Origin: Klebsormidium nitens | Taxonomy: Eukaryota; Plantae; Klebsormidiophyceae | Assembly: GCA_000708835.1 (NCBI GenBank) | Contig: DF236985.1 | Span: 247,926 to 311,925 of the forward strand | DNA length: 64,000 nucleotides | Reading direction: 5' to 3' | In this document: positions 14,301-62,800 of the stretch, in pieces | Layout: each line of letters begins with the position of its first letter | Numbering within the stretch: position 1 is the stretch's first letter | Notes under the pieces: generated by a model | What the model was told of the DNA's origin: nothing | Database searches by the model: none | Seen by the model: the letters and a program-made list of their open reading frames with translations, nothing else | Translations under genes and position numbers: made by a program

Positions 14301-15726
14301 CACGGTTCTTCTTAGAAACCATTCCGAGTGCAGGTGGAGATCTCCAGCAAACACTGGAGTCTGATAAGTGAAGATGTGGCGACTTACGGCGGAAGCCGGT
14401 CCGCTTCTTGTCGCTGGCCGATTGCTCCCAGGTGTAGTTTGCACACTTGTGGCTCGTCGACACCTGCTTGGACGCATTCCGCATAGCCTGTGCCGTTCTG
14501 TACGAGTCTGCTCCGGGAGTCACCACGGCAGGCCAGTTTCTCCATTTTTGGCTGTCGTATTCCTCCTGTTTCCGTTGCAACAACTGTCCATCTTTTTGCG
14601 TTCCAGTTGCCTTTGACGAGAGCCGCCTGTCACTGACCAGCTGATCTTCATCTGCTTCCTTCTCTGCATCCTCCTTGGCAGCAAGCCCTGACGGATCTAC
14701 ATGCTGCGCTTGCATTCCTTGCACCGCAATCTCCTCTTCCGATTCCCCATTTGAGCTTCCAGCATGCCACCGGCTCAGCAGGTTCCAAAACACATCTGCA
14801 ACAAATATGATTTTTAGTAAGGACCTTGCAGAATGGACTCTGTCACAGCTGCCATGCAAGATGGGATCTGCAACTTTGGACTGCAAAGCTGCAATCATGG
14901 AGTTTTCTCCTTCACCCTGCTGCCTCAACACTAATAAATTGGTGATCAGTCAACACGTTTGAAAAGAATGTACTTTCATGTGTTGATCAGATTCCAGGAG
15001 GTTTCACTGATCCAATACTTTACCCACGGAGCAAATATACTGACTGTTTTGCGCTTTAGCACTTGTGTTTTGTCGGCGACCTTTTGGGTGCCTGTTGATG
15101 CCTTGGAGAATGAGAGCCTGACTTACCATCTTCTGCAATGGATCCCCAGTGCCAGAAGCTTGCTGCAAAAGTACCACCAAGGGTTTATAGTCAGCCAAGG
15201 TGTCTAAATAGTACCATCGCTTGCAAACTGTTGGAAAGCTGAGACACTTGCTTGTATTTAGAAGGAGTTCCTCTGAGGTGAGGGTTTCTAAGCGTCCTCA
15301 GAGCTCACGCACACCTTCCTGGATCATGCACTAATTGAATCCTGACTGAGAAGCGACTGTGGTTCTCGCTTCCACCAGACGATTATTTCGAGACCAGAAT
15401 CCCTACCACCACATCTCACCTGCTTGGACCTTCTGACTGGCTGCGGGCCTTGCAAAGGAGACGTCGCTGTAGAGTGTCCCCAGAAACACAACACTGAGCA
15501 GAGTGATGGCCCCAAGCCAAAATCTCTGCGATGCAAGCAGCTTTAGGAACTTCGAGCCAGGGGAGTCACTGGCTTTTGTTCCCCGAGGGGACTCGCTATA
15601 AGGTTTTGGCGATGGTCTCTCGCTTCCCCTTGCGCCGGCTCTTATCCGCGCCACCCCCCATGTAGGGGAAGGTGGAGGGATCTCCAACCCCGCCAGACTT
15701 TGCCCTTTCCATAGAGCTTGTTGCAT
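11378..15726 (-). CDS. DUF616 (TOD1/MUCI70-like) glycosyltransferase-family type II membrane protein
   Basis: Minus-strand exons: 15726-15420, 15203-15127, ~14930-14388 (acceptor uncertain), 14149-13781, 13430-13183, 12783-12585, 12197-12004, 11626-11378. N-terminal TM helix FWLGAITLLSVVFLGTLY. Family segments: RPCGVCYLP, PTFGGHPTW..R..SF, VHCGFV, VVVASAIFGAYD, RRNGKVPKLLLHRLFPRARYSLWVDAKL, DVPEGCFILREH, WFNEVDRFTSRDQISF. Confidence 0.9.
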
Positions 15727-18633
15727 CGTCTTGCCGTGATTGTAACGGCACTCTCAGCAGACAACCAGTTCTTGTAGCTCCATCGGTCAGATGTCACCAG
15801 AGTCCGTCTGCAGAGGCAGAAACTTCCTTCCTAAGAACGATGAAGTGAGGATAGCAAGACAGCATCGTGCAAAATCGCTCGTGGGAGATCGATAAAAGCC
15901 AGCTTATCTTTTATGCATTTGTGCAGAGCAATCCATGCACAACGTTTGCAAAGGAGCTATTGCACCATGAATCCATCAACGAGCTCAGGAACTGATTGAG
16001 AAATCTAGAATCACAGCTTGTTCAACCTATTAAAATGATAAAGTGCACGATAATTCGTGAGAATGGAACTCACATCACCTGGAAGAGCTCCCAGCCTGTG
16101 ACACCAAGCTCTTTAAGAGGGATCTTGCAGCTTGATTACAAAAGGAGCCCGGCAAGAACACCTCATGAGGTCTTGGTCTACCTTGCTGCTGTAAAGTCGT
16201 GTTGCGTACAAGTGCAGCAACAAATAGCGCCCTTGAGCTAGTACGAGCCTACCTATGTAATTAGAACTGTCCCTTGTCGTCGAAGGCGGTTGTGAGGCCC
16301 CAACACGGGGTATGCTGAGCTCGACCTCCCATTTGAGCTGCTCCCAAACGAGTGTCCAGCTCATCTATTTATAGAAATAGACGCACCATCGTTTACCTAG
16401 TCTTGAACCTCGAATTTTTCATGTCGGATTCTCCAACGTTGGAAGTCAGGCTTGGAAGAAGGCTGATCATTAAGACTTGACCATCCGAGTCAATTCCGTC
16501 TCGAGGCCTTAGAAGGCCTTAACCGACGACGGTAACAAGTAAGACGGCCGCCATTGCGGCTGGTTACGGTCGAAGACACCTTCATCACTTCACCAGCCTG
16601 GCAACAGATTCAGCTCAGTGTAAACTCTCGTAGGTAGATTGATCCTTAGGCTGCTGGCTGGCATGAATTTACCAATCAAACTTTCACACCAAAGTTAGCA
16701 AGGAGCTGAGTCGGTCAGCGCAACAGCCGTGCATCATCGCGATCACGTCAGCGCAGCTTGCTGAGGTGAGCCACTCACACTGACAGAGTTCGAAGCCACA
16801 TTGGACTTCGGCCCACCGTCCCCAGGCCATGTTGACTCGGACTCTGCCAGGCATCCCGAGACAGCCTGCAGTTGCGGACTGACTACCTCTGACCTCAGAT
16901 ACGGTCAAAAAAACCTCTGGCAGTGGTGGGAGTCAGGAAGGCTCAGCGCACACTTGGAAACTTTGAAATCTCACTGCCTTAATACATAGTACCGTAGCTG
17001 GACTCATACCACCGGTACCCTTTTCAGTGAACTGCGGCCTGGCCGTACGCGGGTACTATTTACCTGCATCCGATTCCCGTGCATGAGTACACCGTGCAAC
17101 CGTGACGGCACTGTCAGTGCTGCACTCTGGCGGTAGCGGCCTACTTAGCCCTAACCGTTCCTTTATTCAACTTTGCAAAATAGCGACCATGACTGTCGGC
17201 GTACGACGCGAAGGCTCGTATTGCCCGAGTGCCTTCGAAGGTCTGGACGGGTGATTGGAAGGGGACCGATGCCAGCGAATCAGCGATGGAACTGAAGATC
17301 CCGGGGTCAAGAGTAGAACCTTGTTTCGAGGGTCACTTGGCCGTTGATTTGAGCAGATGAGTCTCTCGGATGCCAAATCAGTGTTTGAACTTTGGCCGTT
17401 ATGCCGTATGCCACGGCCCCAAAATCCTTGTAGACCGGTCACCGTATGCTACCGGTAATACCTATGCATGGTCCGGGGCCCATGAGACTGCAGCTTCACA
17501 GGTTTCACAGCTTAGTAGCTTACCTATTGATAAGCGTTGGACTGCCATGATTGCAACTTGCCTCACAGAGGGAGCATGATTCCATGATTGCTCCGGAGAG
17601 CTATTTCTGAAGCACGGCAAGAGCCAATGTCCCAGCGTATTGTTAGCTTGTTAGCTTGTGGAACGCACCCAATCTCATTGTTTTCCCATTGTTCTGGAGC
17701 AAGGTTCTGGAACCATCCGAGTGTTGGCCAAATGATACAAATTGCGTGCTCTGGAGTCGGATTGTTGTGGACATGTCCCATAAGAAGCAATATGCGCATT
17801 CTCTCTGACAACGTACTCTTGTATCGTTTGGCAGTGTTTTAGTTTTTTGATTTTAGATGGTTGTACAGCATCTGCGCATGTTCTTCGTCACATGTTGCGG
17901 TGCCATTGTCCATCCTCCCACTGAGCTTGAGTGGTTAAGCTTCTTTTTCTCAAACCTCAGTCGTTTGGAATTTGTGCGCTGCGAAGTCTCATACCATAAA
18001 CAGTGATGATGGTGCCGGTCGGCCCCAGTCTCTTCCGACATCGTTGAAGGGGGAACAAGAACGTACCGTACATGGTTTGTATATGTAGTGTGATATTGAC
18101 AGGCATGTATAGACCATATACTGGCCTGCGATATATGCGTTGCAACATACATAACGTTATATGACCGGAAGAAGATCACGAAAACTACGGTATACAGATA
18201 AGTCTTGGCGTCTCTGCAGTATGGCTGCATCTTGACATCGCAATACAATTTGTCCAATTTTGATCGTTCAAGCGATTCTGACCAGATGCAAACTGCAGGC
18301 CTCCGTGGCCAGATCCGCTCTCATGTAGTGAATCATTTGCAAAGGACTGGCATGTGAAGTGATCCGACACCGTTCAGCGATGATACACGTAATGATCGGG
18401 TGCCGAGATCAATGCCTGCGGGATGAGTGTGCCAAGCATCCAAAGACAGGCCAGAGCTTTGGCTTCATTCATTTATTAAGACCACCACCGAGGGCAACCA
18501 ACCCGGAACACCGTCTCTCAACTGTAATTGGTCAGGTAATTGCATGCTACTTGCGGTTGCACACCGTTCAGGTCCTCAATTCAAATTGATCGTCATTGAT
18601 GATCATAACCTTCTTACATACTTTCCGAGGTCT

Positions 18634-19919
18634 CTAGTCTTGGTAGCCATGTGGAAGGAGTTTCTCTCTTAGTTCTCTACCCGCAGAAGTGACAAAATTT
18701 GCCCCATCGACATAATAGAATCTACCATTTACAGCAAAGGTAGCGAGAGGTCTTTGGGTGTTTGCAGGCCGTACGTCCTTGAGCCGGATCACTTGCTTGC
18801 TTGTGGTTGCTAACCAGGTTAAAGTATGTACCTCCATCTCCTCGGAGCCTTGCCTCCAAATCACCTTGTGGACATACGGGTTGGAAAACCAGTGGAGCAG
18901 CGCAGTAGTACCAGCACCAAAGAGGACCATGGACATTGAAACTACAGTCTTCACAGCTATTGGGAGTGTTGGGGCTGTCCAAAAAGTAATGACTGGTGCT
19001 CCGAGGCAGGACAGAACACAGCTGGAGATGGACAATAGTTTGACTTTCTTCAAAGTTCCTGACATCGAACCGATGTAGACCACGGGCTCCTTGCTCAAGA
19101 TCAGTGGTTGAACACCACTCGACATGTGCCGTTGAAACCGTAAATCTGGCCCCTCCAACTGTCCCCCTTTCTCATGTGAAACTCCCGATCGCTGTCTGGT
19201 GGAAAATGGTAACTGATGGTCTGGTGCCTTGTGGAGAGCCTCAGCTGCGAAACCGACAAGAGGCTGTACGGTGCCACCTTTTGTAAGCTTGCAAGCCTGG
19301 CTGCTCCAGAATGGTCTTGGAAACCCCTCATTGCCTACCAGTTTGATGCCCGTTTGACTGTAGTCTCTGCTCTGGAGAAAAGCTGCGCCGATTATCCCAT
19401 TCCGACGTGAGCCTGCTCCAGAAAACGGATCAAGGGTCAAGTGAGCTGCTTGTGATCATCTTAACTGCAGGTCGTGATATTGCAATAAGCGCACGCTTCA
19501 ATGTTTCTGAAATCAAGACAACCTCATTCATCAAACGCTACAACAAGTGGGCGCGAGATCAACCTCGCATTCAGTAATCGGGTCCATCAAGAATCATGTC
19601 AAAATCCTGCAGTTACACTGCCAAGATATTCAGACAATCCCTCAAATGCAGCTTCGTTCAAATTCTCTTTAACTTGGCATAAGCCAAACATCGTGTAGCA
19701 GAGCAATGCAGCTGCTTGTCAAATCTTACCAGTCAACAGGTCATTGGACGCACGTGTGTGGACCGAGGAACAAGCAGCAATCTCCTGAACGAGCCCCAGC
19801 AGACCTTCACCACAGAGTGGAAGGCTCTCAAAAAGGACAGATCTTTGACTATTCCCATGTCTCACGACTGGGCGCAATAGAAACGGCAGATTCATCTTTG
19901 CTTCTACAGCATTTAACAA
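18634..19919 (-). CDS. TMEM70: TMEM70-family mitochondrial membrane protein (ATP synthase assembly factor-like)
   Basis: Large exon 19445-18634 encodes VKLLSISSCVLSCLGAPVI...GAGTTALLHWFSNPYV...TLTWLA...RPLATF.VNGRFYYVD, with two TM helices typical of the family. Probable first exon 19919-19730 (MLNAVEAKMNLPFLLRPV..., GTAAGA donor, phase 1) joins it in frame, giving 333 aa. The first exon is less certain than the family call. Confidence 0.8.
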
Positions 19920-20827: not shown

Positions 20828-23800
20828 ATGGACACCTTGGGAAAGAAAGCATGGGAGGTTCCCCCTTCTTCTCCACTCCCAGATGTGCGGGGCGCCAACA
20901 TGCAGTCAAAGAAAAGGGGCCGCAGCAGCTCGCTGAAGGGGCAAGCAATGCTGAAAGAGACGGTGGCGGAAGGAGAGAAGCGCGAGTCCCCTCAGGCTCC
21001 TGTGTCAAAAAAAAGCAGAGGAGCATATGAAGAAGCGGCGCCACCAGAAAGCCCTAGTTTGAAGATGATGGTTGTAGATTTGGTTGTTGAAGATGGGGTA
21101 GCTGCAACGGGGGGAAGGGGGGAAGGAGGGAGACCACCTCGTGCATTGCTGTATGGTCTGACGGCAGAAGGCGAGAGCGTTTGCTGTCATGTATCAGGTG
21201 GGGATGTACGACGGGCATGTAAAAGGAAAGCCCGAGCAAGAGAAGAAATTGTAGACTTTTAGCTTCTTGGCAGTTCCCATCCACCCTTGGTATCTGATGA
21301 GAGTGTGATTGCCTGATAACATACAAAGACAACGAAGTTGATGGGCTACCATCTTCACAGAGGGACATGCATAGGTTTGACTTGATTACTTGTGTTGCCT
21401 AACCCCCGTTTGTTGATCTTTTCTTCTGTTACTCAGCATTCTATGAATGGGGCCCCTCACACTCCCAACTAAAGTAAACACACTTGCACTTGGTATCCAG
21501 AAAGCTGCCAGTCTCCGCGTTAGTAGACACTGAAGGGCTAATCAGTTCAGCATCTCAATGCCCATTTTCAACTTACGTTGACGAAGCTTTCTGTGTGATT
21601 GCAGACTTTACCCCGTACTTCTGGTTTCCTGCTCCAATCAGTCTCCCCAGCCAAGAAGGCGGCGAGGATTGCCCACTAAGCGAAACAGAGCTTGACATCG
21701 TGTTAGAGCGCCTGAATCAGAAGGTTGCCAGCAGTAAGCAGCGCACTGGGTCGAGAGGCGACAAGCCAATCGTGCGACTCACGCAGGAGGACAGAATGCC
21801 TATCATGTACTATCGCCCGAAAGGCTTGTACCCCTTTTTGAAGGTGAGAGAATGAACGTTCTGGTGATAGACCTCCAGTCCAACTGGGAGCTACAAAACA
21901 GTATCCACCCTTCAGCGAAGGTTCGTGTTAGCCTCTTCATCAATCAAAAGCCAGAGTCTGAAGCCCGTCAAAGCCCTACCTTCTGCGCGATGCTTGCTTT
22001 GTGAGTCCTCAAGCGATCAAGTTTTACGTACTTACTTTTATTCAGGTGGAATACTGGCGGAATAAGGACGCTGGTGTCATTGCAAAGGAGCTGTCCCGCC
22101 TGGCATCTGAGAACGCCCTCAAGGAAAGAGGCATTGCATGGAGGATAGGCAGCCCCTGCGCCTATGAAGAGGACATCAAGGTGCGGCGCATACTGCAGCA
22201 TCTCTGCTCCTCTCATTCAAGGCCTTGGCGTCGCTTCTCGGAGCACCACGTACACCTGCTAAACCATCAAGTCGGGCATAGTGGTGGCTGTTGTACGCTA
22301 ATCAGACACTGTATCGTCACTTCCGACTTCAGCTGCTTAGAGAGACGTGCTTTTGCGCATCGGGCAGGTTTCAAACGTGAACCAGTTCCATCTGGGTCTC
22401 GATAGACGTCTTCTCACATTTGTCAGCAACGTCGCCTGTCAATCCTCTTATTGCCTTCTCGACAGGAATACTTAGACACCTGATAATGCCCCAGTAGGTC
22501 GGATCTTATGCAATATGGTTTTCTTAGCAGTGGCGTGATTTGAGTATGAGCTTTGAGAACTTTCTTCATCTGCAGTTTGGCATGCGTTTCATGTGCGAGA
22601 CCAAGATTGCCGGCGGCGCCTGGCTCACAGTCCCGCGCGACAAGCTGGACCCCATTCCCCTCGCCGAGAGGAGGGCCCCCCGGTGCAGCCTCGAGATGAA
22701 CGTGCTGAGCTGGCATGACATCACTGGCCTTACGCCTGACGCAACCAGCGGGATGACATTCGAACACGCACTGCCGGGAAGCGGGACAGCGGGCGCAGAG
22801 TCAGATTCGGCCGCTGCTGCTGACATTGCCGCGGCAGTCCGAGAGCATGACGACAGGGCCTCACTGCTCAGCCCGGAGGACGAGTCGCTTCTGGAGGAGG
22901 GCGAGGGGGCCTTGTCAGAAACAGGAGCGGCACCTCTGAAAGACGCAACTGCATCGGATACTGGAAACCAAACGGGGAGGAAGGGATCAAGTGCGGACAA
23001 GCAAGGGCTGGAAGAGAGTGCGTCAGTCTCCGAGGGCCTAGCGGTTGCGCCGCTCAAGATATTGGCGGTTAACGTACAGACGGCCGGGCGCGGATCTGTG
23101 GATTCCCATGGCAAAGTCGGGCTCGAGCATTCGGCCCCTTCTTCCCAGAGCTCGAAACGGGGTTCGAAGGCAAAAGGCAAGGCCGCCGTGAGCAGCCCCG
23201 AGAGCTCGAAGTCAGCCGCACCTGCAATGACGTCATCCACTGCGACGGAGCTGGAGGTGCTGGAGGGAGTGCCGGGGAGCGACGTGGCAGGAGGGGGGGT
23301 GGCACTGCCTAACAGGGACCCGGTTCTGATGATTTCAAACAGAATCCGACGGTCGGCAGAGCCGGATGCAAAGCAAAAGTTAGTGGTGTTCACGTTCCGG
23401 GAAGGATTCGTGGCTCCGCCAGGGGTGGACGGGCGAGTGTTCAAGACCGAGAGCGAGATGCTACGGGCATGGAAGCGGTTCGCGACCGAAGAGGCGGACC
23501 CTGACGTCATCTGCCTCTTCCAGCTGAAGGAGAGCCTGAGGTGAGAGCAAGCGCAAGCGCTGCGTTCGTGGTGTTCGTTTGGTGCAGTACCAAAAGAGCA
23601 GGCATTTGAAAGTTTTGAAACATTCCTGACGGGACTGGAAGGGCTGCCCCTTTTTATATGTCAAGGATTTGTGCAAAATGTTTGACTCTCGAAGCTCTGG
23701 TTCCGGACACGTTGAGACGTTACGTGTGAAAGCGTTTGCATCCTTGCCCCTTGTCTCGACGCAGCTTCTGTCTCGTCGGCCTCGCCACACGACAAGCATG

Positions 23801-26800
23801 CTTGGCGTCCTCGGGCTTGTCGACATCCACCCCAATTACTTGGTCGAACTTGCAGTCCTCGTACAGCGGTAATATCTCCTGACATTTTCGCGGAAAGGGA
23901 CGCCCGAAAGCCCAGGCGGTTCTACGTTCTGGCGCAACGTCGCCCAAAATGTTCTCAAAGCACACCCCTCGGCACGGCATTTGACTATTTGTCCTTACGT
24001 GCCATACCCATCCTCAAATTTAAGGTACCTGAACGAGCGGTTCAAGCATCTGAAGCTGGGGTCGCTCGACCTGGGCCGGCGTCCCAACAAGGCGCTCGAG
24101 GTCAAGTCGGTGGTTTCGTACGGCAAGAATTGGGTTAAGAACCAGCAGCGGATGACGGCCACGTCCAACCTGGAGACGTACCGGGCGACCGTCGAGGGGC
24201 GGGTCGTGGTCGATATGCTGCGCTCGATCACGATCGCGCACAATCTGTCCACCTTCACGCTGGCCGAGTGCTCACAGGTACGGAACTCTCCCCGGCATGA
24301 GAAAGTCAATTGGAAATGGCGATGACGTAGCAGATGAAGGTTGCCGGCTTCGTTTCGGACAAAGTGGCCTGGTTGGAAGAGCACATCTTTTTCTGGGGCG
24401 AACGTATAATACGGTCGTTCCGCGAATATGAAACATAAATTTTACCCTATGCAAGTCCATATCATCATTCTTTCGAACTTGATTCTGATCCAGCCGGTTC
24501 TCTTAATGTACTCTATTCTGCCCCCTCTTGAGCTCAAGCAACTTCCAAACCTTCTCTTTCCAGATGTAGGATTCAGCTGCTGTTTTTTTCCATCTCTGTC
24601 AAGCGGACTTGACACACTCCGCTTCTCGTTTCCTGGCGCAGGTGTTTCTGGGAGAGACGAAGGAGGTGCTGTCGGCAGCGGCCATCACGGCACTATGGGC
24701 GGGCCGGCACGGGGGCCCCTCTCGGCTGGCCGTCTACTCTTTGCGAGAGGCGGAGCTGGCTTTGCGGCTGCTGGATAAGCTGCAAATCATCACGGAAACG
24801 CTCGAGATGGCTAGGGTAAGGGACCGTTTCTCCACCGATTTGTGCTCGCCTCCTTTCGGATTCAAAGGAGAAGGCAAGATATTCACAGGCGACGATGTGC
24901 GCTTTTTGTAACCCATAACCTCTAACTAAAACACCGCGTATTTGATCTTTTGAACGAAGCAAGGTGGCCTTCGAAGCCGCAAGCATAATGGTTCCTCCTT
25001 TTGCTATTTCCGTATCGTCGTGAAGGCCACGCCCCCAATCTTACCTGTCTTGTGTCTGAAAACGCGGTGCTATCGAAGGAAAAGCCTTTCGATTATAGTT
25101 TGAAGTATGGAAACTGATGTCACGGGGACGCTCGTCCGGCCTGCAGGTGACCGGGCTCACTCTTTCGGACGTCCTGTACAAAGCCCAAATGATCCGCGTC
25201 CAGAGCCTGCTGCTGCGGAGTGCAGGGAAAGAAGGGGGCCTTCTAGGCGGCCCGCCCCTGGGGGGACAACTCTCAGAGAGCCCGTTTCTGTTGCACCCCA
25301 AGGAGAGGCAGACTGCCGGCTTGTATCAAGACCCCGTTGTAAGTGACGGCTTGGGAGAGAACCCACAACGTGCTGGCAACTCAAATTCCCTTGGGAGCTC
25401 TGCTGTGAAAAGTTACTATCATTTTCGGCAGCCCGTTACGTGGATGCGCAAGAGTTACTTTCCTCGATGACTGTGGTTGACTGTCCGTTCGCTGAAGCCT
25501 ACTTCCAAACATAGTTCCAGTAATTTTCGTTATTGTTATCAAGCAGAGCTTAAAAGCAGTAAGCGCAAACTGGATAAAAGGCGTCTGGTTTATTGCACTT
25601 CTGATTCGAACGACCCATTCAATATATTTGCATCCGAAGGGTTACTTCTATGGGTTTTTCTTTTTTCTTCGCAGGCGATCCTGGACTTTGCCAGCCTGTA
25701 CCCGTCCCTGTTCATCGGCCACAATCTCTGCTACTCTACACTCCTTCACCCCGATGACGTGGCAGCGCTGGACCCCACGGACGTCTACACGACGCCCACG
25801 GGCGCGCACTTTGTCCGAACCGCAGTCCGCCACGGTATCTTGCCGCGCATCTGCAGCGCGCTCATCGCCACCCGCAAGCAGGTGCGTGCGTGCTTTTGTG
25901 CTCCGGTCGTTGTACCGATCGTGCAAATGTTGAGGCACTTCTTCGACTCGAGAGGCCTTGCTTTGCATCTGGTGCACAGAAGGACGTGGTGGCTATTGAT
26001 ACTGGAAACCGCGATCTATTGGGGCGTTTATTGGGGCGCCTAGTCTCGAGGTCAGCCCTGCCCTTTGGGGTCCGTGGGGAAAGTGATAATGCTGGATTAT
26101 TCACATATGTCAAATAGACTATTGGCGTCCTCAAGTAGCCTAGGCTTAGCAAGAGACAGCTTCGTAAGAGGGCCCGTCCTTTTTGTACCGTCGCTTTTCT
26201 GGATCGGACCCGCTTAGTCCTCCCCAATATAAACAAGCACGGTTAAAAGAACAGTCTTTTCCCTTCTTATGCAGGCCCGTGACAGGATGGCCGAGCGTGA
26301 CATCACCCCCACCGAGCGCGCGGTCCTGGATGGTCGGCAGAAGGCGCTGAAGCTGTGCTCGAATGCGCTGTACGGCTTCACCGGGGCGCAGGCGTCGCCC
26401 ATGCAGGCCTTGCCGCTGGCCGACAGCTGTCTCGCCATGGGGGCGGCTGCCTGCAAAAAGGCCGTCGAGCTCGTGAACGGGGCCTTCGACAATGGCAAGG
26501 TCAGTAGCAAAGTTTGGCATCGTGGGTCGCTGAACTTCCCGCATCCTTCAGAGGGCTTTGCGTTGTTTGTCTGACGTTCGGGCTCGGAAGCTATGCTTCC
26601 CGATGTTCCTCTTCATTCAGCGGTAGACAACAAACATTGTTTCTTTTGCGTAGGCGTGGCAGTTCGCTTTGGGTTTTCCCTGCCTCATGCCGTTTATATC
26701 AGGATCCCAGGTTTTGCATTTCGGTCAAGAACAAGCTACCCAAGATAGATTCGCAGGCACGTCTGTTTTTGAAGGCTTTCTTGGGTGACCTTCTTTCTTA

Positions 26801-29800
26801 TCTTCCGCTCTCTAAGACCTACAACCATGTTGGAAGGTTGTCGTGGAGCCTTGAAACAGGCGTTACCGTGGAGAATGCGGTAAGAGAGGGCTCTGTTTGT
26901 GCGGAATCATGGCGGCAGCCATGGCGGAACCTTAGAAGTGCACACCTGAAAACGTCCGATGAAAAGGTATCATCAAAATTGACGGTTCTTGAGCGCTGTT
27001 CAAAAGGCGACATGCAAAAGATGGGCCCCTGATATGAACTGCATGAATCTGCCTCTCCCTCTTGGTGCAGGTCATCTACGCCCAAACCGACAGCGTCTTC
27101 GTCCGCTTCAAGGGTGCATCCATCGCCGAAGCAATCGAGCTGGGGCATCAAGCGTCCGCTGTTGCCTCTGCGGCGTTCCCTCCCCCGATCTCGCTTAAGT
27201 TCGAGCGTGTGCTCAGCCCTTTCCTGCTACTGCAAGTGAACCGGTATGCGGGGCGGCAGTTTACCAGCGCGGGGGAAGGGAAGGGACAAGGGACGCTGTT
27301 TGTGAAAGGAGTAGAGGTGGATCGAAGGTGGGTCACAGCGACCTTTTTAAGTGGAGCAGGGCGGTACAGCTCTTTGCGTCAAACCGGCCATCGGGTTTCA
27401 AGTGCTCGAGCATGGTTCCTATCCTGCGCCGTTCGATCGCTAAGGATGGCAACAAACGGCTCAAGATCAGGAACCCTGCTTGGAGGAGTTAGAACCCGAT
27501 GACAAGTTTGACGCAACCAGCTGTAACATCTTGACTCAGATCCGTGTACTCCGGGGCTTGGCAAGAAACTTGGTTGCGGTCATTTGGAGGTTCCATCAGT
27601 CTTGAGCATTTTCGCTGTCCAGAGATTTTTTGATTGGACAGCTATCAATCACACCGAAGAATGTCAGACGCTTCAGGAATCCAGGGCGCTTGGGCTTGAA
27701 GCTTGAACTTGTAAGCTACATCCCGGGGGCTTCGATACCTATTGCGCTCAAAATTGCGCGAACGAATGGCCATGTGGACAGCAAACTGACAAAACTTCTT
27801 CTTGCCACAGGGACGTACCCGGCTTTGTCCGCATAGTCTGCAAGCGCGTGCTGCAGAAGATCCTGGTGGACCGCGACGTGGACGGCGCGGTGGAGGCGAG
27901 CACGGCCATGATCCGGCGCCTCGTGGGCGGCAAGTGCTCCATGAGCGACCTCGTCATGACGGGGGGGCTCTGGCGGGTGAACGATGAGGACATCACGCGC
28001 GTCGCAGGTGAGGCTCCGGAGATACATTCTTTGATGCTGTCATGACGTTTGATGACGTCACGATGTTGGCGTCTGCGTTCTGGACGGTGCTGAACTGGCT
28101 GCAGAACCGGTGACTCTTGCCTAGCCACGAAACTGGGACGGTTGATCAGGTTCTGTTTGGCCGGTTCTAGGCTTAGCGACGGAAGGCCTTTGGAGTGTGA
28201 CAGCCTCACACCTTCACGTCAACAGTCCCCTCCTCGAAGAAAAGTTTGGTGGCGCTATTTTGATCCTCCTTTTCTTGAGTACTCCCTTCTTCCGATCCCT
28301 TGAGGAAGCAGAAAGTGGAGTTTCTTTGAGTCGAATCCCGCCATCTGTGCAGCTGGCACGCCGAGTAAGGGCCCCAGCGGTCAGCGGGAGGGCCCCGCCA
28401 CTGCGGAGGAGGGCCGCGGGCCGCACGTGTCGCTAGCAGTGCGCCTGAAGAGGCGCGACGGCGACCGGCAGTTCCACATCGGGGAGCGGATACCGTACGT
28501 CCTGGTGTCTGGGCGAGGGAAGCTTCAGGTAGGGGCAGATACGTGAACGCGCGAGTACCTAGTAAAGGCTCGTGCTGTTTGCACAGAATGAACGATCAGG
28601 CACGGGTAATTTGGACAGAATGCGTTTGAACGAACTGACTGTTGCTGCCTCGGATTCGCTGCACTTGCAAATCCTTTGACCTCATCTCATCAAGCTTGTT
28701 CGAGCGTAAGCAGGATCCTTGAAACGGCCCTAGCCGGCTGTTGAAAGCCGAGATTCTGTTCCGCTTGGCTGGCAGAAGGTTGTCAAAAGGGCTATGTTGT
28801 CCAGGTACGAACGGGTCGAAACGTTGCAGGTGTCACAGCGCTTTGACTGGAAAAAAGCATCAAAACTGGAGACCGAATCTGGTGGGGGAAAACGATTTTC
28901 TAGGAAGGAAAAGCGAAAAGCTGCTGGAAGTTGCGCACCGGCCAGGGGATGGGCCATCTTTGGTCTGGATCTGGTGTTATGAAGGCCTGCCGCGCCACAG
29001 AAGAGCTACCAGCCCCGGCCTCTTACCACGGAGTTCCAAAATTCTCCATTGCGTGGATTCCTCGTCGTGAAGTTTAGCGGTTTTGGGATCTCCCGATTTA
29101 ATGCCCCGTGTGTATACGCACAGGACGACATGGCGGAAGACCCCGTGGAAGCGGCGCGCAGGGGGCTGGCGCCAAACATCGGGGTGTACCTGGAAAACAA
29201 GCTGCGCAAGCCGCTCGAGTCCATCTTTGAGTATGTCGTGGTAAGCGCGGCAGCAGGGGTTCTTTACTGCAGTTTTTGAAAAGGAAAGGATGGCGAGATT
29301 GCACTTTTCGGCCTACGAAGCTTCTCCTAGTCTCAAAGAAACGTCAGGGATAGAGCGAGATTGGCCGTCGGATTCCCTTTAGAATACCCCACTTCAAGCT
29401 ACCCCCTTTCTTGTCAAACCGAGGCTACGGTGTCAGCCTTTTGGATCGAAGACGCTTCTGTTGCGCGCACACTTCTACTTTCTGTCTGTCTTCAGCCGGC
29501 AGAACGAGCAAAGCAGCCAAGGGACCGTTCATCAAAAAGCGCCATGTCCTTCGGGCCTTGTCAAGCGGTCAGCCAACGCGCGGGTTTCTTTGTGTGCAGA
29601 GCGACAAGGTGCTGCGGGAGCTGTTTACGGGGCCCCACACGATCCCCCCGCCCTCCATGGCGGCCGCAGCGGCGGCCTCGGGGGGCGGCAAGCAGTCCCT
29701 CATGAGCACCTTCTTCAAGCCCAAGCCGGCGTGCCTCGGATGCCGGTGAGACCGTCACACCGTTTTCCGAGACTCGGGAAGGTTCGTACTTTCCTGGGAC

Positions 29801-31004
29801 GGGGCGATACAGTGTCCTGCGTGGAAGTCGATTATTGAAATTTTCTTTGATGGTTTTTTCTGGATATAAGCCGTTCCGTTGTCCGCTCTTTGCCGGCCTT
29901 GCGGGCTAGGCACTCGGCCCCGATCTGTCAAGGTGCCGAGCATTCTGAGCTGTTGAGCAGGTTGGCAAAATAACTTTTTTGTCGGTACTTGTAAAGCAAT
30001 CCTTCTTCTATCGCACCTTCGCTCTCTTTGAGGCAAAGTGCAAATTTTCGAAAGTTTTGGGCCGTGTCCAATGGAGACTGCTGCCGCATCATGACACTCG
30101 ATTTGCAGCGGCAGTGACTCGAAATCGCTATGCACGGACATGCTTGAGCCTTACCACTCATTACGTAGCTCGTTCCAAGGGCACGGGCACACAGAGCAAG
30201 AATTTTGTCTGTGCTTATTGAAGTACAATTATCGCATACCCGCCCTTAAGAGGGGTATTTGGAGTACTTTGATCACCGGAAGACGGCTCAGTTTAGCAGC
30301 GTGACTTGCCAGCCATACTGATCGGAGATCAGCAGCGTGAGTTTCGAGCCGGCATACTGCTTAGCGACAGAAAGTATGCAATTGCCGATAAACAGTCGCC
30401 GCACCATGACGTACGCATGATGTGCGGATGATGTGGAACCACCCGGATAAGCTTACCCAAAGAGTTCCCTCAGACGGCCAATGGAGGCGGAACGCGGGCC
30501 GCTGTGCGCATCGTGCGGGGCTAGCGGTGCGGGGCAGCGCGTGGTCGCCGAGCTGGCGGCGGAGCAGCGCGAGCAGGAGGCGCTCTTCGCGGCCGCGGCG
30601 TCCGAGGTGCGCTTGGGGACGCCTTGCGTTCTTTCCTCGTCTCGGACCACACGCTTCCTTCCTTCACGACGCTTTGTATTCTGCTTTTGATGTTTCCTTG
30701 CTGCTTCTTCACGAGAATCTTTCCCATCTTCACCTGAATAAGATTAGCAATCATTCTGAAGCTCTGTCCTGCGAGCCAGCGTTGTGGCGCTGTTCCGTTT
30801 CCTTATCACCGTCATAGTGTGAGGCCCAAGTATGCTCAAGCACTATCCTCTTCGCCTTTGCAGAGTGTGCGCTGTCACTCCGGTACTCCTTTCGACCCTG
30901 TACTCGATACAAACGCGGACTCACCGGCCTTCTTCATCCGATATGAAGCACCTAGAGCCTTGCAGCAAATCGAGCAATCAATCTCCCGGTTTGAAGAAAG
31001 CTGA
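20828..31004 (+). CDS. Divergent DNA polymerase delta catalytic-subunit-like protein (family B), ~1308 aa, with degenerate exonuclease and CysB motifs
   Basis: 16 GT-AG exons totalling 3927 nt with no internal stop: 20828-21197, 21605-21843, 22046-22180, 22576-23540, 24025-24277, 24642-24815, 25147-25338, 25675-25881, 26275-26499, 27071-27327, 27811-28007, 28353-28528, 29124-29240, 29600-29745, 30474-30606, 30864-31004. POLD1-like segments: ILDFASLYPS..HNLCYSTL, TPTGAHFV, VLDGRQKALKLCSNALYGFTG, YAQTDSVFV, HVSLAVRLKRRD..GERIPYV, EDP..YLENKLRKPLESIF, CLGC/CASC. Confidence 0.9.
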
Positions 31005-32239
31005 ACATGGCCGATACGCCTGCTAACCTGCTCTATTGTGTTATGGAACTTGTAACATACCGTACTATTGACGGGCTAATCTCGACTTAGTGAGCCACTC
31101 TGTCTGCTTGCCTGCTGCTGTTGCAGGACCGCATGCAAGGTCGCATGGTTCCCATGAATTTTGTGAGCATGGTCGGCGGACTTCGACGTGCACAACCGCG
31201 TCAGTCCTGAATTTTTGTCTTAATATATACAGGTTACACGTACCTTTTGTGATTCCCTGGGTACGACCGCGATTGTGTGCTGCCCTGCACGATCAACGTT
31301 CTGCATGCTGCCTAGCGCTTGCATGGCGTGTGCCTTGCAACGTGAAGGTTAACATGAATTTCTGGCCGTACGTAGATATTGGATTGACAGCTCTCAGTCG
31401 CGAGACCTGTGCATATGCAATTGCAAATGCAATCATGTTGGATCGAGATCTGCCGCGCGCTCAGTGCTGGCATGCACGGCTCAGTGCTGCATTGTATTCA
31501 ATGCGCTGCAAATCTATATTTGTCGTCCGACAGGTACATGGCATGTGCATGTGTCCGCCCAAATTAGGCGCGGCGGCGATGGCAGTTCAAGCTATAGATT
31601 CGATTACGTGGAACTAAGGCTTATATAAGAGCACGATGATGCAGCTAGAGAATGCATAACATGATTTACCCAATCACATGGGAGTCATTATTTCATGCAG
31701 TTATTATAAATCATGATTTGTGACGATGATCGAAAGAATGTACGCTGCCTATTCCCATGCCTACAGTCCAATTTCATCTTACATCTGACGGGCGATCCAC
31801 CCGGATTCGAAGCCCGCCAAGTAAATTCACTGTTTATAGCAACTTACCGTATTCCCAAGCGTGTTGCTAGAACCATGGGTAGAACGTGTCTGTGAATTAG
31901 TGGCGAGATTCGAACTCTTTCACTAGAACTAATTTCTCTTGGTGAGCTGTAGAGGCATAGCAGCTGGTCAGAAAAACACTTGGATGACTAACGATCTGGA
32001 TTCAATAAAAGATGATACTGGACCTTACAAGAAGGTTTGCACAGTCTGCTGGAACTTAAGCTGTTCCAATCGAGTTTTCAAGGTGCAAATACGCTCAAGC
32101 AGTCGATGCACGTGCACCTTGATTACGGCCTGAAAGGTCTGGATATATCTACAAAGACACATATTTTCTTTAATCACCATCGACGACTAACGAGCTTTGC
32201 CGATCAATATCTCAACGCATTGTTTATGCTGCGCGCTTG

Positions 32240-59877: not shown

Positions 59878-62800
59878 ATGGCGGCCAGCTGGAGCTTTGC
59901 AGCTCTGGTGCTGGTACTCCTGCTGATGACCCCGACGGCAAAAGCGCAAGGTGAGCTTGTCATGCCAACTCAACTGGAGCAAAAGTCTGTGATGGGGTGA
60001 ATTTATTCTTTGGGGTCTTTAGCTCGCTTGTTGATCGACCGCTGAATCTTGCTTGGGGCCACAAGCTGACCAAATTGGCAAACGGCACCAAACCACCACC
60101 CGATATCCATATCATTCATTTTGTGGGCATCAAGTTGTTTTGGTGGAGGAGTACCTTTAAAAAAACCTGCAGCCACCTTCTTGAGCAAAGTGGGCGACAG
60201 CGCACCGAAAGCCACTGTGTCACAAAACACAATTTCTGATCATCTCAACATGACAACCCTTTACACCTGCCATACTCTTGCCCCTGCAGTCGTCCAAGTC
60301 GGGTCAAGGTACTGGACCTTGATGTCGAATACAGACTTCTCGGGGTTCGACATATTGATCGGCACTGGTCAGTGTGGCGGTGGGCGTGGATACATGTCGT
60401 ACACTCCGTCGCAGTGCGCGACCGTGTGCCTCTCGTACACAAATTGCGTGGGCTTCGAAGTGACCACGGACTTCCAAAAGTGCTGCTACGCCAAGAACCA
60501 GATGAGCGGCGCGGGCACCTCCGCAACCGCCGACGCGTACATTCTCATTCGGAGTGAGCGGACACACAACCCTAGTAATCTCGTCGACGTGAATCAACAA
60601 CGGATCTAAGACGCCTTGATGCCAGTGCGGTGGGGAGAGTTCGTCTAAATGGGGGGCCAGAATGGATAGGACGAAGCGTTGTTGGTCACTGGTCCGACTT
60701 GCAGGAGGGCAAGCAGTGTGGAATGCTGGAGCCTGTTCTGTGACATGTGATTCTGTCAAAAGGGGTTCTGATCTACGACAATCCTGGAGTCATGTCGTTT
60801 CTGAGGACCGTGTCACATCTTGAGATTCAAGAAGCCAGGAAGTTGACGCCTTTTGACTTGGAAGTAACAAGGCGTCCTCATCACAACCTCCCGGTGTGGA
60901 GCAGCCAGCGAGTGAAGGACTTTATCAGGTACATGCACAAGCAACGCTCCAACTTCAGGTGATGGCGGTTTGTACTTTTGCCCAAAGTCCCAGCACTTGC
61001 CCCAGTCGAGGTTCAGAAAGCGTAAGTGATTTCTCTTACTTTTTCCTGCAGATCCTCCCCCAAATCCTCCTCCGAACCCACCGCCACCGAATCCACCGCC
61101 GCCCAACCCACCACCCCCCAACCCTCCGCCAAACCCGCCGCCTCCGAACCCTCCTCCTAAACCGCCACCGCCCAACCCTCCTCCAAATCCGCCACCGCCC
61201 AACCCTCCTCCAAATCCGCCACCACCAAACCTTCCTCCTAACCCGCCACCGCCCAATCCTCCTCCAAACCNNNNNNNNNNNNNNNNNNNNNNNNNNNNNN
61301 NNNNNNNNNNNNNNNNNNNNNNNNNNNNNNNNNNNNNNNNNNNNNNNNNNNNNNNNNNNNNNNNNNNNNNNNNNNNNNNNNNNNNNNNNNNNNNNNNNNN
61401 NNNNNNNNNNNNNNNNNNNNNNNNNNNNNNNNNNNNNNNNNNNNNNNNNNNNNNNNNNNNNNNNNNNNNNNNNNNNNNNNNNNNNNNNNNNNNNNNNNNN
61501 NNNNNNNNNNNNNNNNNNNNNNNNNNNNNNNNNNNNNNNNNNNNNNNNNNNNNNNNNNNNNNNNNNNNNNNNNNNNNNNNNNNNNNNNNNNNNNNNNNNN
61601 NNNNNNNNNNNNNNNNNNNNNNNNNNNNNNNNNNNNNNNNNNNNNNNNNNNNNNNNNNNNNNNNNNNNNNNNNNNNNNNNNNNNNNNNNNNNNNNNNNNN
61701 NNNNNNNNNNNNNNNNNNNNNNNNNNNNNNNNNNNNNNNNNNNNNNNNNNNNNNNNNNNNNNNNNNNNNNNNNNNNNNNNNNNNNNNNNNNNNNNNNNNN
61801 NNNNNNNNNNNNNNNNNNNNNNNNNNNNNNNNNNNNNNNNNNNNNNNNNNNNNNNNNNNNNNNNNNNNNNNNNNNNNNNNNNNNNNNNNNNNNNNNNNNN
61901 NNNNNNNNNNNNNNNNNNNNNNNNNNNNNNNNNNNNNNNNNNNNNNNNNNNNNNNNNNNNNNNNNNNNNNNNNNNNNNNNNNNNNNNNNNNNNNNNNNNN
62001 NNNNNNNNNNNNNNNNNNNNNNNNNNNNNNNNNNNNNNNNNNNNNNNNNNNNNNNNNNNNNNNNNNNNNNNNNNNNNNNNNNNNNNNNNNNNNNNNNNNN
62101 NNNNNNNNNNNNNNTGCACCACCGCCCGAACCTCTTCCTAACCCGCCGCCCATATACCCACCACCAGACCCACCACCTCCAAACCCCCCCCCAAACCCAC
62201 CGCCTCCAAACCCACCACCAGACCCACCACCGCCTAATCCTCCTCCCAATCCACCACCAAACCTGCCCCCGCCAGACCCACCGCCGAATCCACCGCCTCT
62301 CAAACCTCCTCCTAGTCCACCCCCCCCAAATCCTCCTCAACCGAACCCGCCCCCTCCAAACCCGCCCCCCCACAACCACCCCCTAACTCGCCTCCTCCAA
62401 ACCCGCCTCCTCCTAACCAACCTCCTCCGAGCCCTCCCCGTCCAAACCCGCCACCTAACCCGCCCCTCGGCAATCGCCGCCCCCCCCTTGAGCCCGCCCC
62501 CACAGCCGTCACCCCCGGTCCCTCCACCAGATGCGACGCTTTTGAACTTTGAGACGAGTGCTATTCTTTTCCCGAACTTCAGCCCCTCTGGTGAGTAGCA
62601 TATAATTTGAATTGGGCATCTGATTGGCACTCAAGAAGTTCCGAACGGGAGCGGCAGCAGGTCGAGTGAATGAGTACCGCTGCCATGTAATCCTAGTCGT
62701 CCACTCGAGCCGAACTCCGCAAAGCGCTTGCGAGGAAGGTTTATCACAGGACTGTTGATTGTAGAATTTGGACGCTAGGGCATTTAATGAACGATCACTG

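What the first reader, a model, noticed from the sequence alone, without database searches (positions are those of the whole stretch)
20828..31004. Intact but systematically rewired Pol delta paralog: candidate specialised, proofreading-less or pseudo-polymerase
The gene is POLD1-like along its whole length and has 16 clean exons with no stop or frameshift, so it does not look like a decaying pseudogene. The residues lost are exactly those for proofreading, the Fe-S/B-subunit interface and part of the palm. The two essential polymerase carboxylates (motif A Asp 25684, last motif C Asp 27089), the steric-gate Tyr, motif B K/N/YG and CysA are kept. A replicative Pol delta should not tolerate this combination, so a canonical POLD1 should exist elsewhere in the genome and this would be a neofunctionalised copy: an error-prone or gap-filling polymerase, or a DNA/PCNA-binding scaffold. 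I know of no described eukaryotic B-family class with this profile.
Basis: partly seen in the sequence, partly recalled or inferred. Interest (0 to 1): 0.88.

Follow-up and report, generated by a model that had tools for sequence, protein, structure and literature searches.

The report
Proofreading-less Pol delta paralog, conserved in green lineage
This Klebsormidium nitens gene is an expressed, selectively maintained member of an old, apparently undescribed family of DNA polymerase delta-like genes, found from green algae to ferns, that lost proofreading and rebuilt part of the active site, so the green lineage may have an extra nuclear repair-type polymerase.

Summary
Window 20828-31004 (+) holds an intact 16-exon GT-AG gene identical to the public K. 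nitens protein P0021 (1308 aa).

- **Expression:** ten junctions appear in spliced RNA contigs from four studies, with no sequence differences.
- **Lost:** all three Exo motifs, the first Asp of motif C (YGDTDS to YAQTDS), KKRY (now VNRY), and three of four CysB cysteines.
- **Kept:** motifs A and B, the second motif C Asp, and CysA.

This is not a K. nitens oddity. The same changes define a monophyletic family in Chlorokybus, moss, a lycophyte, ferns and many chlorophytes. No seed plant appeared among the hits. Four land plant species hold both the paralog and a canonical POLD1.

- An intact ortholog in a related Klebsormidium gives dN/dS of 0.05-0.10.
- The family has a consensus PIP box where canonical POLD1 has a degenerate one.
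- Its moss member (Pp3c17_18800) is reported as 5.5-fold bleomycin-induced.
- CysB loss is specific to the Klebsormidium lineage.

Most likely this is a PCNA-tethered, proofreading-less repair or extender polymerase. A non-catalytic scaffold is not excluded. A canonical POLD1 in K. nitens was not shown directly. The scan had separately noted the Exo and CysB losses on this same window.

The parts
20828..31004 (+). Whole coding region of the Pol delta-like paralog (P0021, 1308 aa, 16 exons)
   Evidence: Exact spliced mapping of P0021 to the window, all introns GT-AG. Expressed and spliced.
20828..21197 (+). Exon 1 (aa 1-123), N-terminal region
   Evidence: The orthologous exon in the Klebsormidium relative is 30 nt shorter, in frame.
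21605..21843 (+). Exon 2
22046..22180 (+). Exon 3
22576..23540 (+). Exon 4 (aa 249-569): N-terminal domain end and degenerate exonuclease domain with two low-complexity inserts
   Evidence: dN/dS 0.06-0.13 against the relative.
23071..23079 (+). ExoI position: N414-V415-Q416 in place of D-I-E
   Evidence: Alignment with 28 canonical POLD1, all of which have DIE. Coordinates.
23497..23540 (+). ExoII region DPDVICLFQLKES (continues into exon 5): canonical N..FD lost, one-residue deletion
24025..24277 (+). Exon 5
24642..24815 (+). Exon 6, holds the ExoIII remnant (24726-24761, Y686 kept, Asp replaced by E690)
   Evidence: Its 3' end is joined to exon 7 in RNA contigs.
25147..25338 (+). Exon 7
25675..25881 (+). 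Exon 8 with motif A (25678-25746): D780 at 25684-25686, steric-gate Y785 at 25699-25701
   Evidence: (invariant in the family). Junctions in RNA.
26275..26499 (+). Exon 9 with motif B (26332-26388): R866, K871, N875, Y878, G879
27071..27327 (+). Exon 10 with motif C VIYAQTDS (27071-27103; Q925 at 27083-27085 replaces the first Asp, D927 at 27089-27091 kept) and LLLQVNRYAG (27224-27253; V976, N977 replace K, K)
   Evidence: No base differences in RNA contigs.
27811..28007 (+). Exon 11 (thumb)
28353..28528 (+). Exon 12 (thumb)
29124..29240 (+). Exon 13
29600..29745 (+). Exon 14 with a consensus PIP box Q-S-L-M-S-T-F-F (29693-29716) and the first CysA pair C1214, C1217 (29732-29743)
30474..30606 (+). 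Exon 15 with the second CysA pair C1229, C1232
30864..31004 (+). Exon 16 with the CysB remnant (30864-30935): S1263, C1266, D1277, S1282 at the four Cys positions; stop codon at 31002-31004
   Evidence: Junction 30606|30864 and the sequence are confirmed in RNA contigs. Pfam zf-C4pol is not detected in P0021 but is in the fern ortholog.

Best explanation
The gene encodes the K. nitens member of an ancient Viridiplantae family derived from, or sister to, the Pol delta catalytic subunit.

Shown:
- The family keeps the whole Pol delta architecture: N-terminal domain, exonuclease fold, palm, fingers, thumb and a Cys-rich C-terminal domain.
- It has lost all three exonuclease catalytic motifs.
- It has fixed a particular set of active-site replacements. 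The first Asp of motif C became Gln or His, KK of KKRY became VN, and the first Glu of the LEFEK element became Lys.
- Motif A, motif B and the metal-binding second Asp of motif C stay invariant.
- The K. nitens gene is transcribed, correctly spliced and under strong purifying selection.

Inferred:
- The protein is a catalytically active, proofreading-less DNA polymerase.
- It is recruited to PCNA through its consensus PIP box.
- It acts in repair or damage-tolerance synthesis, for example extension from poor primer ends, rather than bulk replication.
- In most lineages it probably shares the Pol delta B subunit through an intact CysB, as Pol zeta does.
- In the Klebsormidium lineage the CysB metal ligands have eroded. 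There the C-terminal domain, which is still constrained, must work without a four-Cys cluster.

My confidence is about 0.9 that it is a functional member of this conserved family. It is about 0.55 that it is an active repair or extender polymerase.
For: Gene and expression:
- Exact 16-exon model.
- Spliced RNA contigs from 4 studies, 10 junctions, no differences.

Family:
- Full-length relatives carry the same changes in Chlorokybus, Physcomitrium, Diphasiastrum, Adiantum, Ceratopteris, Coccomyxa, Trebouxia, Symbiochloris, Chlorella and Monoraphidium.
- The clade has 100% SH-aLRT support and its inner topology follows the species tree.
- Six intron positions are shared between the K. nitens and moss members and are not found in canonical POLD1.

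Selection:
- An intact 1288-aa ortholog in a related Klebsormidium from a metagenome has identical exon boundaries.
- dN/dS is 0.05-0.10 overall and below 0.14 in every region.

Catalysis probably kept:
- D780, Y785, R866, K871, N875, Y878, G879, T926, D927 and S928 are invariant in 16 family members.
- 48% of canonical-invariant palm and finger positions are kept and a further 23 are switched and fixed. In the exonuclease domain only 26% are kept.

PCNA:
- Q-x-x-[LMIV]-x-x-F-[FY] sits just before CysA in 14 of 16 family members and in the Klebsormidium relative. Canonical POLD1 has a degenerate form without the Gln or the second aromatic.

Repair role:
- The moss member lies on CM009332.2 and canonical POLD1 on CM009321.2. 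The offset of 11 equals chromosome 17 minus chromosome 6, so the moss member is Pp3c17_18800.
- Pp3c17_18800 is listed as 'POLD subunit 1b' (PMC8711748).
- It is reported as 5.5-fold induced by bleomycin, next to Pol zeta and POLD4 (PMC4990234).

Precedent:
- Archaeal PolB2/Dpo2 lacks proofreading and has the first Asp of YGDTDS replaced. It was predicted dead, yet it is an active translesion extender (PMC7390963, PMC8764526).
Against: - No biochemical data exist for any member.
- The first motif C Asp, both Lys of KKRY and one Glu of LEFEK are gone, which could cripple catalysis.
- Conservation of the remaining motifs could reflect DNA or nucleotide binding without catalysis.
- The damage-induction evidence comes from moss only. 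It rests on my mapping of a gene identifier through chromosome accession numbers, not on a sequence match.
- PCNA and B-subunit binding are inferred from motifs only.
- K. nitens has lost three of four CysB cysteines and its relative two, so the shared-B-subunit model may not hold in this organism.
- A canonical POLD1 in K. nitens was not demonstrated here.
Confidence: 0.6

Rival explanations
1. Catalytically inactive pseudo-polymerase. The family would be a DNA- and PCNA-binding scaffold or regulator that kept the Pol delta fold but no longer synthesises DNA. Comparable cases are the inactive C-terminal half of Pol epsilon and other inactivated PolB modules.
For: The first Asp of motif C, KK of KKRY and one Glu of LEFEK are replaced family-wide. 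The exonuclease site is dead. Pfam DNA_pol_B scores are half those of canonical POLD1 (266 against 529 bits). Inactivated PolB modules are known in eukaryotes (PMC2669801, listed).
Against: The two metal-binding Asp residues, the steric-gate Tyr and all motif B nucleotide-binding residues are invariant across roughly the whole green lineage. A pure scaffold would not need this. Dpo2, which has the same first-Asp replacement, is active (PMC8764526).
Confidence: 0.27
2. Decaying or recently relaxed duplicate: a pseudogene in the making, specific to K. nitens.
For: Other fast-evolving, silent polymerase-subunit paralogs were noted elsewhere in this genome by earlier agents (unchecked). The CysB ligands are eroding in the Klebsormidium lineage.
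Against: The open frame is intact in two Klebsormidium lineages with dS near or above 1 and dN/dS of 0.05-0.10. Spliced transcripts occur in four studies. Orthologs are conserved from chlorophytes to ferns.
Confidence: 0.02
3. It is the Pol zeta (REV3) catalytic subunit of green algae, misnamed as Pol delta.
For: Like REV3 it is a Pol delta relative with a dead exonuclease domain, inserts in that region and a Cys-rich C-terminal domain.
Against: P0021 scores 431 bits against human Pol delta but 162 bits against yeast Pol zeta. Its length is 1100-1300 aa. Moss has a separate Pol zeta gene, Pp3c2_33440, beside Pp3c17_18800 (PMC8711748). From my own knowledge, REV3 keeps YGDTDS and KKRY. REV3 sequences could not be fetched for the tree.
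Confidence: 0.02
4. It is the only, and therefore replicative, Pol delta of K. nitens, so the odd profile would be tolerated in a replicase.
For: I could not retrieve a canonical K. nitens POLD1 with the searches available.
Against: Ceratopteris, Diphasiastrum, Adiantum nelumboides and Physcomitrium each hold both the paralog and a canonical POLD1. Two first-stage notes describe a POLD1 with at least 17 exons on another piece of this genome (unchecked).
Confidence: 0.04

Closest known systems
DNA polymerase delta catalytic subunit (POLD1 / Pol3)
   Same: It is the best sequence match over the whole length (human p125, 431 bits, residues 327-1099). The domain order is the same. Motifs A and B are nearly identical. 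CysA is present, and CysB is present in most family members.
   Different: All three Exo motifs are dead. Motif C has Gln or His in place of the first Asp. KKRY became VNRY. It has a consensus instead of a degenerate PIP box. It forms a separate long-stemmed clade outside canonical eukaryotic POLD1. Its intron positions are mostly different. It co-exists with canonical POLD1 in the same species.
DNA polymerase zeta catalytic subunit (REV3)
   Same: It is a Pol delta-related B-family enzyme with an inactive exonuclease domain. In most family members the C-terminal CysA/CysB domain is of the kind that lets REV3 share the Pol delta accessory subunits (PMC3526297). The moss member is damage-induced together with Pol zeta (PMC4990234).
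   Different: Sequence similarity is much lower (162 bits). The protein is much shorter. The active site is remodelled, whereas REV3 keeps the canonical motifs (my own knowledge). Moss has a separate REV3 gene.
Archaeal PolB2 / Sulfolobus Dpo2
   Same: The signature is the same: no proofreading, plus replacement of the first Asp of YGDTDS. Dpo2 was long predicted inactive, yet it is an active, damage-induced mismatch and lesion extender (PMC7390963, PMC8764526).
   Different: This is an analogy only. Dpo2 is a 555-aa archaeal enzyme without an exonuclease domain or Cys-rich tail. The algal and plant family is a full-length eukaryotic Pol delta derivative.

Membership tests
Canonical Pol delta catalytic subunit (POLD1) | B-family architecture with Pol delta as the closest homolog along the whole length | tested here: met
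   Pfam DNA_pol_B 266 bits and DNA_pol_B_exo1 52 bits. Human Pol delta is the best solved match, 431 bits.
Canonical Pol delta catalytic subunit (POLD1) | Active 3'-5' exonuclease site (ExoI DIE, ExoII N..FD, ExoIII Y...D) | tested here: not met
   The motifs read NVQ, QLKES with a deletion, and Y...E. All 28 canonical sequences in the alignment keep them.
Canonical Pol delta catalytic subunit (POLD1) | Motif C YGDTDS and KKRY intact | tested here: not met
   They read YAQTDS and VNRY.
Canonical Pol delta catalytic subunit (POLD1) | CysA and CysB four-Cys motifs in the C-terminal domain | tested here: not met
   CysA is complete. CysB keeps 1 of 4 Cys in K. nitens. Pfam zf-C4pol is not detected in P0021.
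Canonical Pol delta catalytic subunit (POLD1) | Groups with POLD1 orthologs in a tree | tested here: not met
   It lies in a separate clade (100% SH-aLRT). Canonical POLD1 of animals, fungi and green plants group apart from it (98% and 76% in two runs).
Exo-dead Pol delta-like family of Viridiplantae (defined here) | Shared derived states: Exo motifs lost, Y-[AGC]-[QH]-TDS, VNRYAG, and a consensus PIP box before CysA | tested here: met
Exo-dead Pol delta-like family of Viridiplantae (defined here) | Monophyly and shared family-specific intron positions | tested here: met
   Clade support 100%. Six intron sites are shared by the K. nitens and moss members only.
Exo-dead Pol delta-like family of Viridiplantae (defined here) | Intact CysB (C..CHSGG....LC.N..CP) | tested here: not met
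   Most members keep it. It has eroded in K. nitens (1 of 4 Cys) and in its relative (2 of 4). Diphasiastrum lacks one Cys.
Pol zeta catalytic subunit (REV3) | Closest similarity to REV3, a large REV7-binding insert region, length of 1500 aa or more | tested here: not met
   162 bits against yeast Rev3 versus 431 against Pol delta. Length is 1308 aa. REV7-binding motifs were not examined.
Active DNA polymerase (function, not family) | Primer extension activity | not testable with these tools
   There is only indirect support: invariance of the metal-binding Asp pair and of the dNTP-binding residues.

The most novel reading that the evidence does not exclude
Green algae and non-seed land plants would possess a fifth nuclear B-family DNA polymerase catalytic subunit, beside alpha, delta, epsilon and zeta. 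It would be a PCNA-bound, proofreading-less Pol delta-like enzyme with a re-engineered metal site. It would be damage-inducible, would date at least to the common ancestor of Viridiplantae, and was later lost in seed plants. Klebsormidium would additionally have freed it from the Fe-S cluster that normally couples such enzymes to the B subunit.
Probability: 0.45. Interest if true: 0.85.

Novelty: new variant of a known kind. Interest (0 to 1): 0.72.

Why it matters
Eukaryotic nuclear B-family polymerases are taught as a closed set of four: alpha, delta, epsilon and zeta. A fifth lineage would change the inventory of replication and repair enzymes for a large part of plant diversity, and its loss in seed plants would need explaining. 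That lineage would be conserved for several hundred million years, expressed and damage-responsive.

The family is also a natural experiment on two open questions. The first is what the first motif C aspartate and the KKRY lysines contribute to B-family catalysis and fidelity. The second is whether the CysB Fe-S cluster is dispensable, since Klebsormidium has lost it while the rest of the protein stays constrained. The moss ortholog lies in an organism with easy gene targeting, so the function can be tested directly.

Tried and rejected
- **Profile search:** a search with the family alignment returned only the query itself. The search words come from the first 500 residues, which include low-complexity inserts.
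- **Search for a canonical K. nitens POLD1:** the Riccia POLD1 query listed only its best 120 hits, all land plants. The findings search by sequence was blank. The metagenome scan returned mostly intron-less picoalgal-type POLD1 genes and no contig from the sample that holds the Klebsormidium relative.
- **Exact-protein look-ups:** these failed for P0022, P0019 and P0089. P0041 was found only on transcript contigs.
- **Outgroups:** REV3, POLA1 and POLE sequences could not be fetched. The tree is rooted only on three unnamed Pol delta-like sequences without the Cys-rich tail, which may be giant-virus type, and in one run on an archaeal PolB.
- **ESM Atlas look-up:** it gave only generic DNA polymerase clusters.
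- **Structure prediction:** not run. The tool returns no coordinates, so it could not test active-site geometry.
- **Pseudogene, REV3 and sole-replicase readings:** considered and rejected or ranked low for the reasons given under the rival explanations.
- **Viral origin:** judged unlikely. The family has the cellular Pol delta N-terminal and Cys-rich C-terminal domains, a species-tree-like topology, introns and host-like composition.
Full report
**The gene**

The + strand between 20828 and 31004 holds a spliced gene. Its stop-free pieces match B-family polymerase exonuclease and polymerase domains and, among solved structures, human and yeast Pol delta best. A search of 1.84 billion representative proteins with the large exonuclease-domain exon, followed by a search with the fern hit, returned the public protein P0021, 'DNA polymerase catalytic subunit [Klebsormidium nitens]', 1308 aa.

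P0021 maps to the window without a single mismatch as 16 exons with GT-AG introns, from 20828 to the stop at 31004.

**Expression**

Logan contig sets of 30-45 million letters hold 37-63% of the sampled words of window 25100-31100. That total is transcriptome-sized for a genome of about 100 Mb (the genome size is from my own knowledge).

I laid four runs from four studies on 25100-31099. Every run contains contigs that skip exactly the annotated introns between exons 7 and 16. That is nine GT..AG joints, on contigs up to 4013 nt, at word depths of 38-227. Intron-containing contigs have depths of 1-27. No base differences or indels were reported. A 255-nt loose end before 25146 matches the end of exon 6, which adds a tenth junction.

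The gene is therefore transcribed and spliced as modelled, and the unusual residues are not assembly errors. Contigs cannot give expression level or strand.

**The residues**

I aligned the protein with 28 canonical POLD1 sequences from plants, green algae, fungi, a bird and others (coordinates).

| Site | Canonical | K. nitens |
|---|---|---|
| ExoI | DIE | N414-V415-Q416 |
| ExoII | N..FD | QLKES, one residue deleted |
| ExoIII | Y...D | Y686...E690 |
| Motif A | DFxSLYPS | DFASLYPS (D780, Y785), kept |
| Motif B | K, N, YG | R866, K871, N875, Y878, G879, kept |
| Motif C | YGDTDS | YAQTDS (Q925, D927) |
| KKRY element | KKRYAG | VNRYAG |
| CysA | four Cys | four Cys, kept |
| CysB | C..C...C....C | S1263, C1266, D1277, S1282 |

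Pfam finds no zf-C4pol domain in P0021, although it does in the fern ortholog.

**It is a family, not a local oddity**

Full-length proteins with the same set of changes occur in the following lineages:
- *Streptophyte alga:* Chlorokybus.
- *Moss:* Physcomitrium patens.
- *Lycophyte:* Diphasiastrum.
- *Ferns:* Adiantum and Ceratopteris.
- *Chlorophytes:* Coccomyxa, Trebouxia, Symbiochloris, Chlorella vulgaris and Monoraphidium.
- *Unnamed assemblies:* several further sequences.

No seed plant appeared among the hits to the fern member, although many seed-plant canonical POLD1 did.

In a maximum-likelihood tree the family is one clade with 100% SH-aLRT support on a long stem. Inside it, streptophytes and chlorophytes separate. 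The order Chlorokybus, Klebsormidium, land plants follows the species tree.

Ceratopteris, Diphasiastrum, Adiantum nelumboides and Physcomitrium each also hold a canonical POLD1.

The K. nitens and moss members share six intron positions that canonical POLD1 lacks. The 29 introns of canonical POLD1 are identical between moss and the liverwort Riccia. Only one to three of the 15 K. nitens intron sites coincide with them.

The family sits outside the canonical eukaryotic POLD1 clade. However, the stem is long and the outgroup weak. An AU test does not reject a tree that joins it to green-lineage POLD1 (p = 0.084). The duplication is at least as old as Viridiplantae; whether it is older is open.

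**Selection**

A 36-kb contig from JGI metagenome 3300060285 carries the ortholog of a related Klebsormidium. Using the K. nitens exons as guide, all 16 exons are present with the same GT-AG boundaries. Two exons differ by in-frame 30-nt indels. The frame is open for 1288 codons, with 84% amino-acid identity.

dN/dS is 0.10 by NG86, 0.05 by YN00 and 0.07 by ML, with dS of about 1.0-1.7. It stays below 0.14 in each of five regions, including the dead exonuclease domain and the C-terminal domain. With dS this high the ratio is approximate, but it is far from neutrality.

**What the conservation pattern says**

In 16 family members the motif A Asp, the steric-gate Tyr, the motif B Arg, Lys, Asn, Tyr and Gly, and T-D-S of motif C are invariant.

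I took the positions that are nearly invariant in canonical POLD1 and asked how many the family keeps.

| Domain | Kept |
|---|---|
| Exonuclease | 26% |
| Palm and fingers | 48% |
| Thumb | 39% |
| C-terminal domain | 53% |

A further 23 palm and finger positions are replaced by a different residue that is then fixed in the family. Among them are D to Q in motif C, KK to VN, and E to K in the LEFEK element.

This looks like a rebuilt active site that is still constrained, not a decayed one.

Just before CysA, 14 of 16 members and the Klebsormidium relative have Q-x-x-[LMIV]-x-x-F-[FY], the consensus PIP box. In K. nitens it reads QSLMSTFF, at 29693-29716. Canonical POLD1 has a form without the Gln and the second aromatic.

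Most members keep CysB as C..CHSGG....LC.N..CP. K. nitens keeps one Cys, its relative keeps two different ones, and both have Ser at the fourth position. So the cluster ligands began to erode in their common ancestor.

**Functional clues from the literature**

I found no paper that describes this family, in searches of about 8.4 million open papers and preprints.

In Physcomitrium, PMC8711748 lists three 'POLD subunit 1' genes: 1a Pp3c6_19160, 1b Pp3c17_18800 and 1c Pp3c27_3350. The paralog lies at 12.66 Mb of CM009332.2 and a canonical copy lies on CM009321.2. The accession offset of 11 equals 17 minus 6. The third cluster sits on a 5.3-Mb record that fits the smallest chromosome. So the paralog is 1b. 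This is an inference from accession numbering, not from a sequence match.

PMC4990234 reports Pp3c17_18800 as 5.5-fold induced by bleomycin (1438 against 301 reads). It is listed with POLD4, Pol zeta, Rad51 and other repair genes. The canonical copies are not in that list.

Archaeal PolB2/Dpo2 offers a precedent. It has no proofreading and the first Asp of YGDTDS is replaced. It was long predicted inactive, yet it is an active, damage-induced extender of mismatched and lesion-opposed primer ends (PMC7390963, PMC8764526).

**Reading**

The best-supported explanation is a PCNA-tethered, proofreading-less Pol delta-like polymerase that works in repair or damage tolerance. It is conserved across the green lineage outside seed plants. 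The Klebsormidium lineage has additionally dispensed with the four-Cys CysB site.

The main rival is a non-catalytic scaffold. It cannot be excluded without enzymology.

The pseudogene, REV3 and sole-replicase readings are contradicted by the selection, expression, similarity and co-occurrence data. The last of these still needs a direct search of the K. nitens genome for the canonical gene. I could not do that. It is indicated only by two unchecked first-stage notes of a POLD1 with at least 17 exons on another piece of the genome.

**Limits**

- The tree lacks REV3, alpha and epsilon sequences.
- Absence from seed plants and liverworts rests on one word-indexed search.
- Expression evidence comes from contigs only.
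- The moss gene identity is inferred.
- No activity has been measured.

Noticed in passing
window 15458-15735 and 18655-19101; L001 655-932 and 6062-6508: Two upstream stretches of the window also align at 74-80% with the contig of the Klebsormidium relative, in the same order as the polymerase gene. The neighbourhood is therefore syntenic between the two lineages. The relative's called genes there include a chlorophyll a/b-binding protein and a TMEM70-like protein.
   Followed up: no
window 61271-62114: There is an assembly gap of 844 N. It explains the apparent low-GC bin at 60-62 kb in the composition profile.
   Followed up: yes
window 25310-25704, 26474-27029, 28500-29150, 29716-30502: Low-depth contigs (word depth 3-27, against 38-227 for spliced contigs) run through several introns in all four runs. 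They probably represent unspliced precursor or retained introns. The 787-nt contig across the intron between exons 14 and 15 recurs in three runs.
   Followed up: no
window 22576-23540 (exon 4): Two acidic or Ser/Ala-rich low-complexity inserts flank the dead ExoI motif, followed by a Lys/Gly-rich stretch. Streptophyte family members carry inserts at the same places, and moss-like fragments have Arg-Gly repeats there. The inserts are still under purifying selection between the two Klebsormidium lineages.
   Followed up: partly
L084 (Riccia fluitans) and L086 (Physcomitrium patens), canonical POLD1 loci: All 29 intron positions and phases of canonical POLD1 are identical between a liverwort and a moss. 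The paralog has 22 introns in moss and 15 in K. nitens, with only 6 in common. Intron turnover has been much faster in the paralog.
   Followed up: partly
proteins P0064 (Chloropicon) and P0078, alignment at motif C: Two Pol delta-type sequences in the comparison set carry a long insertion exactly inside YGD|TDS. The Chloropicon protein has a Pfam intein domain (PF14890), so this is an intein in the polymerase active-site motif.
   Followed up: no
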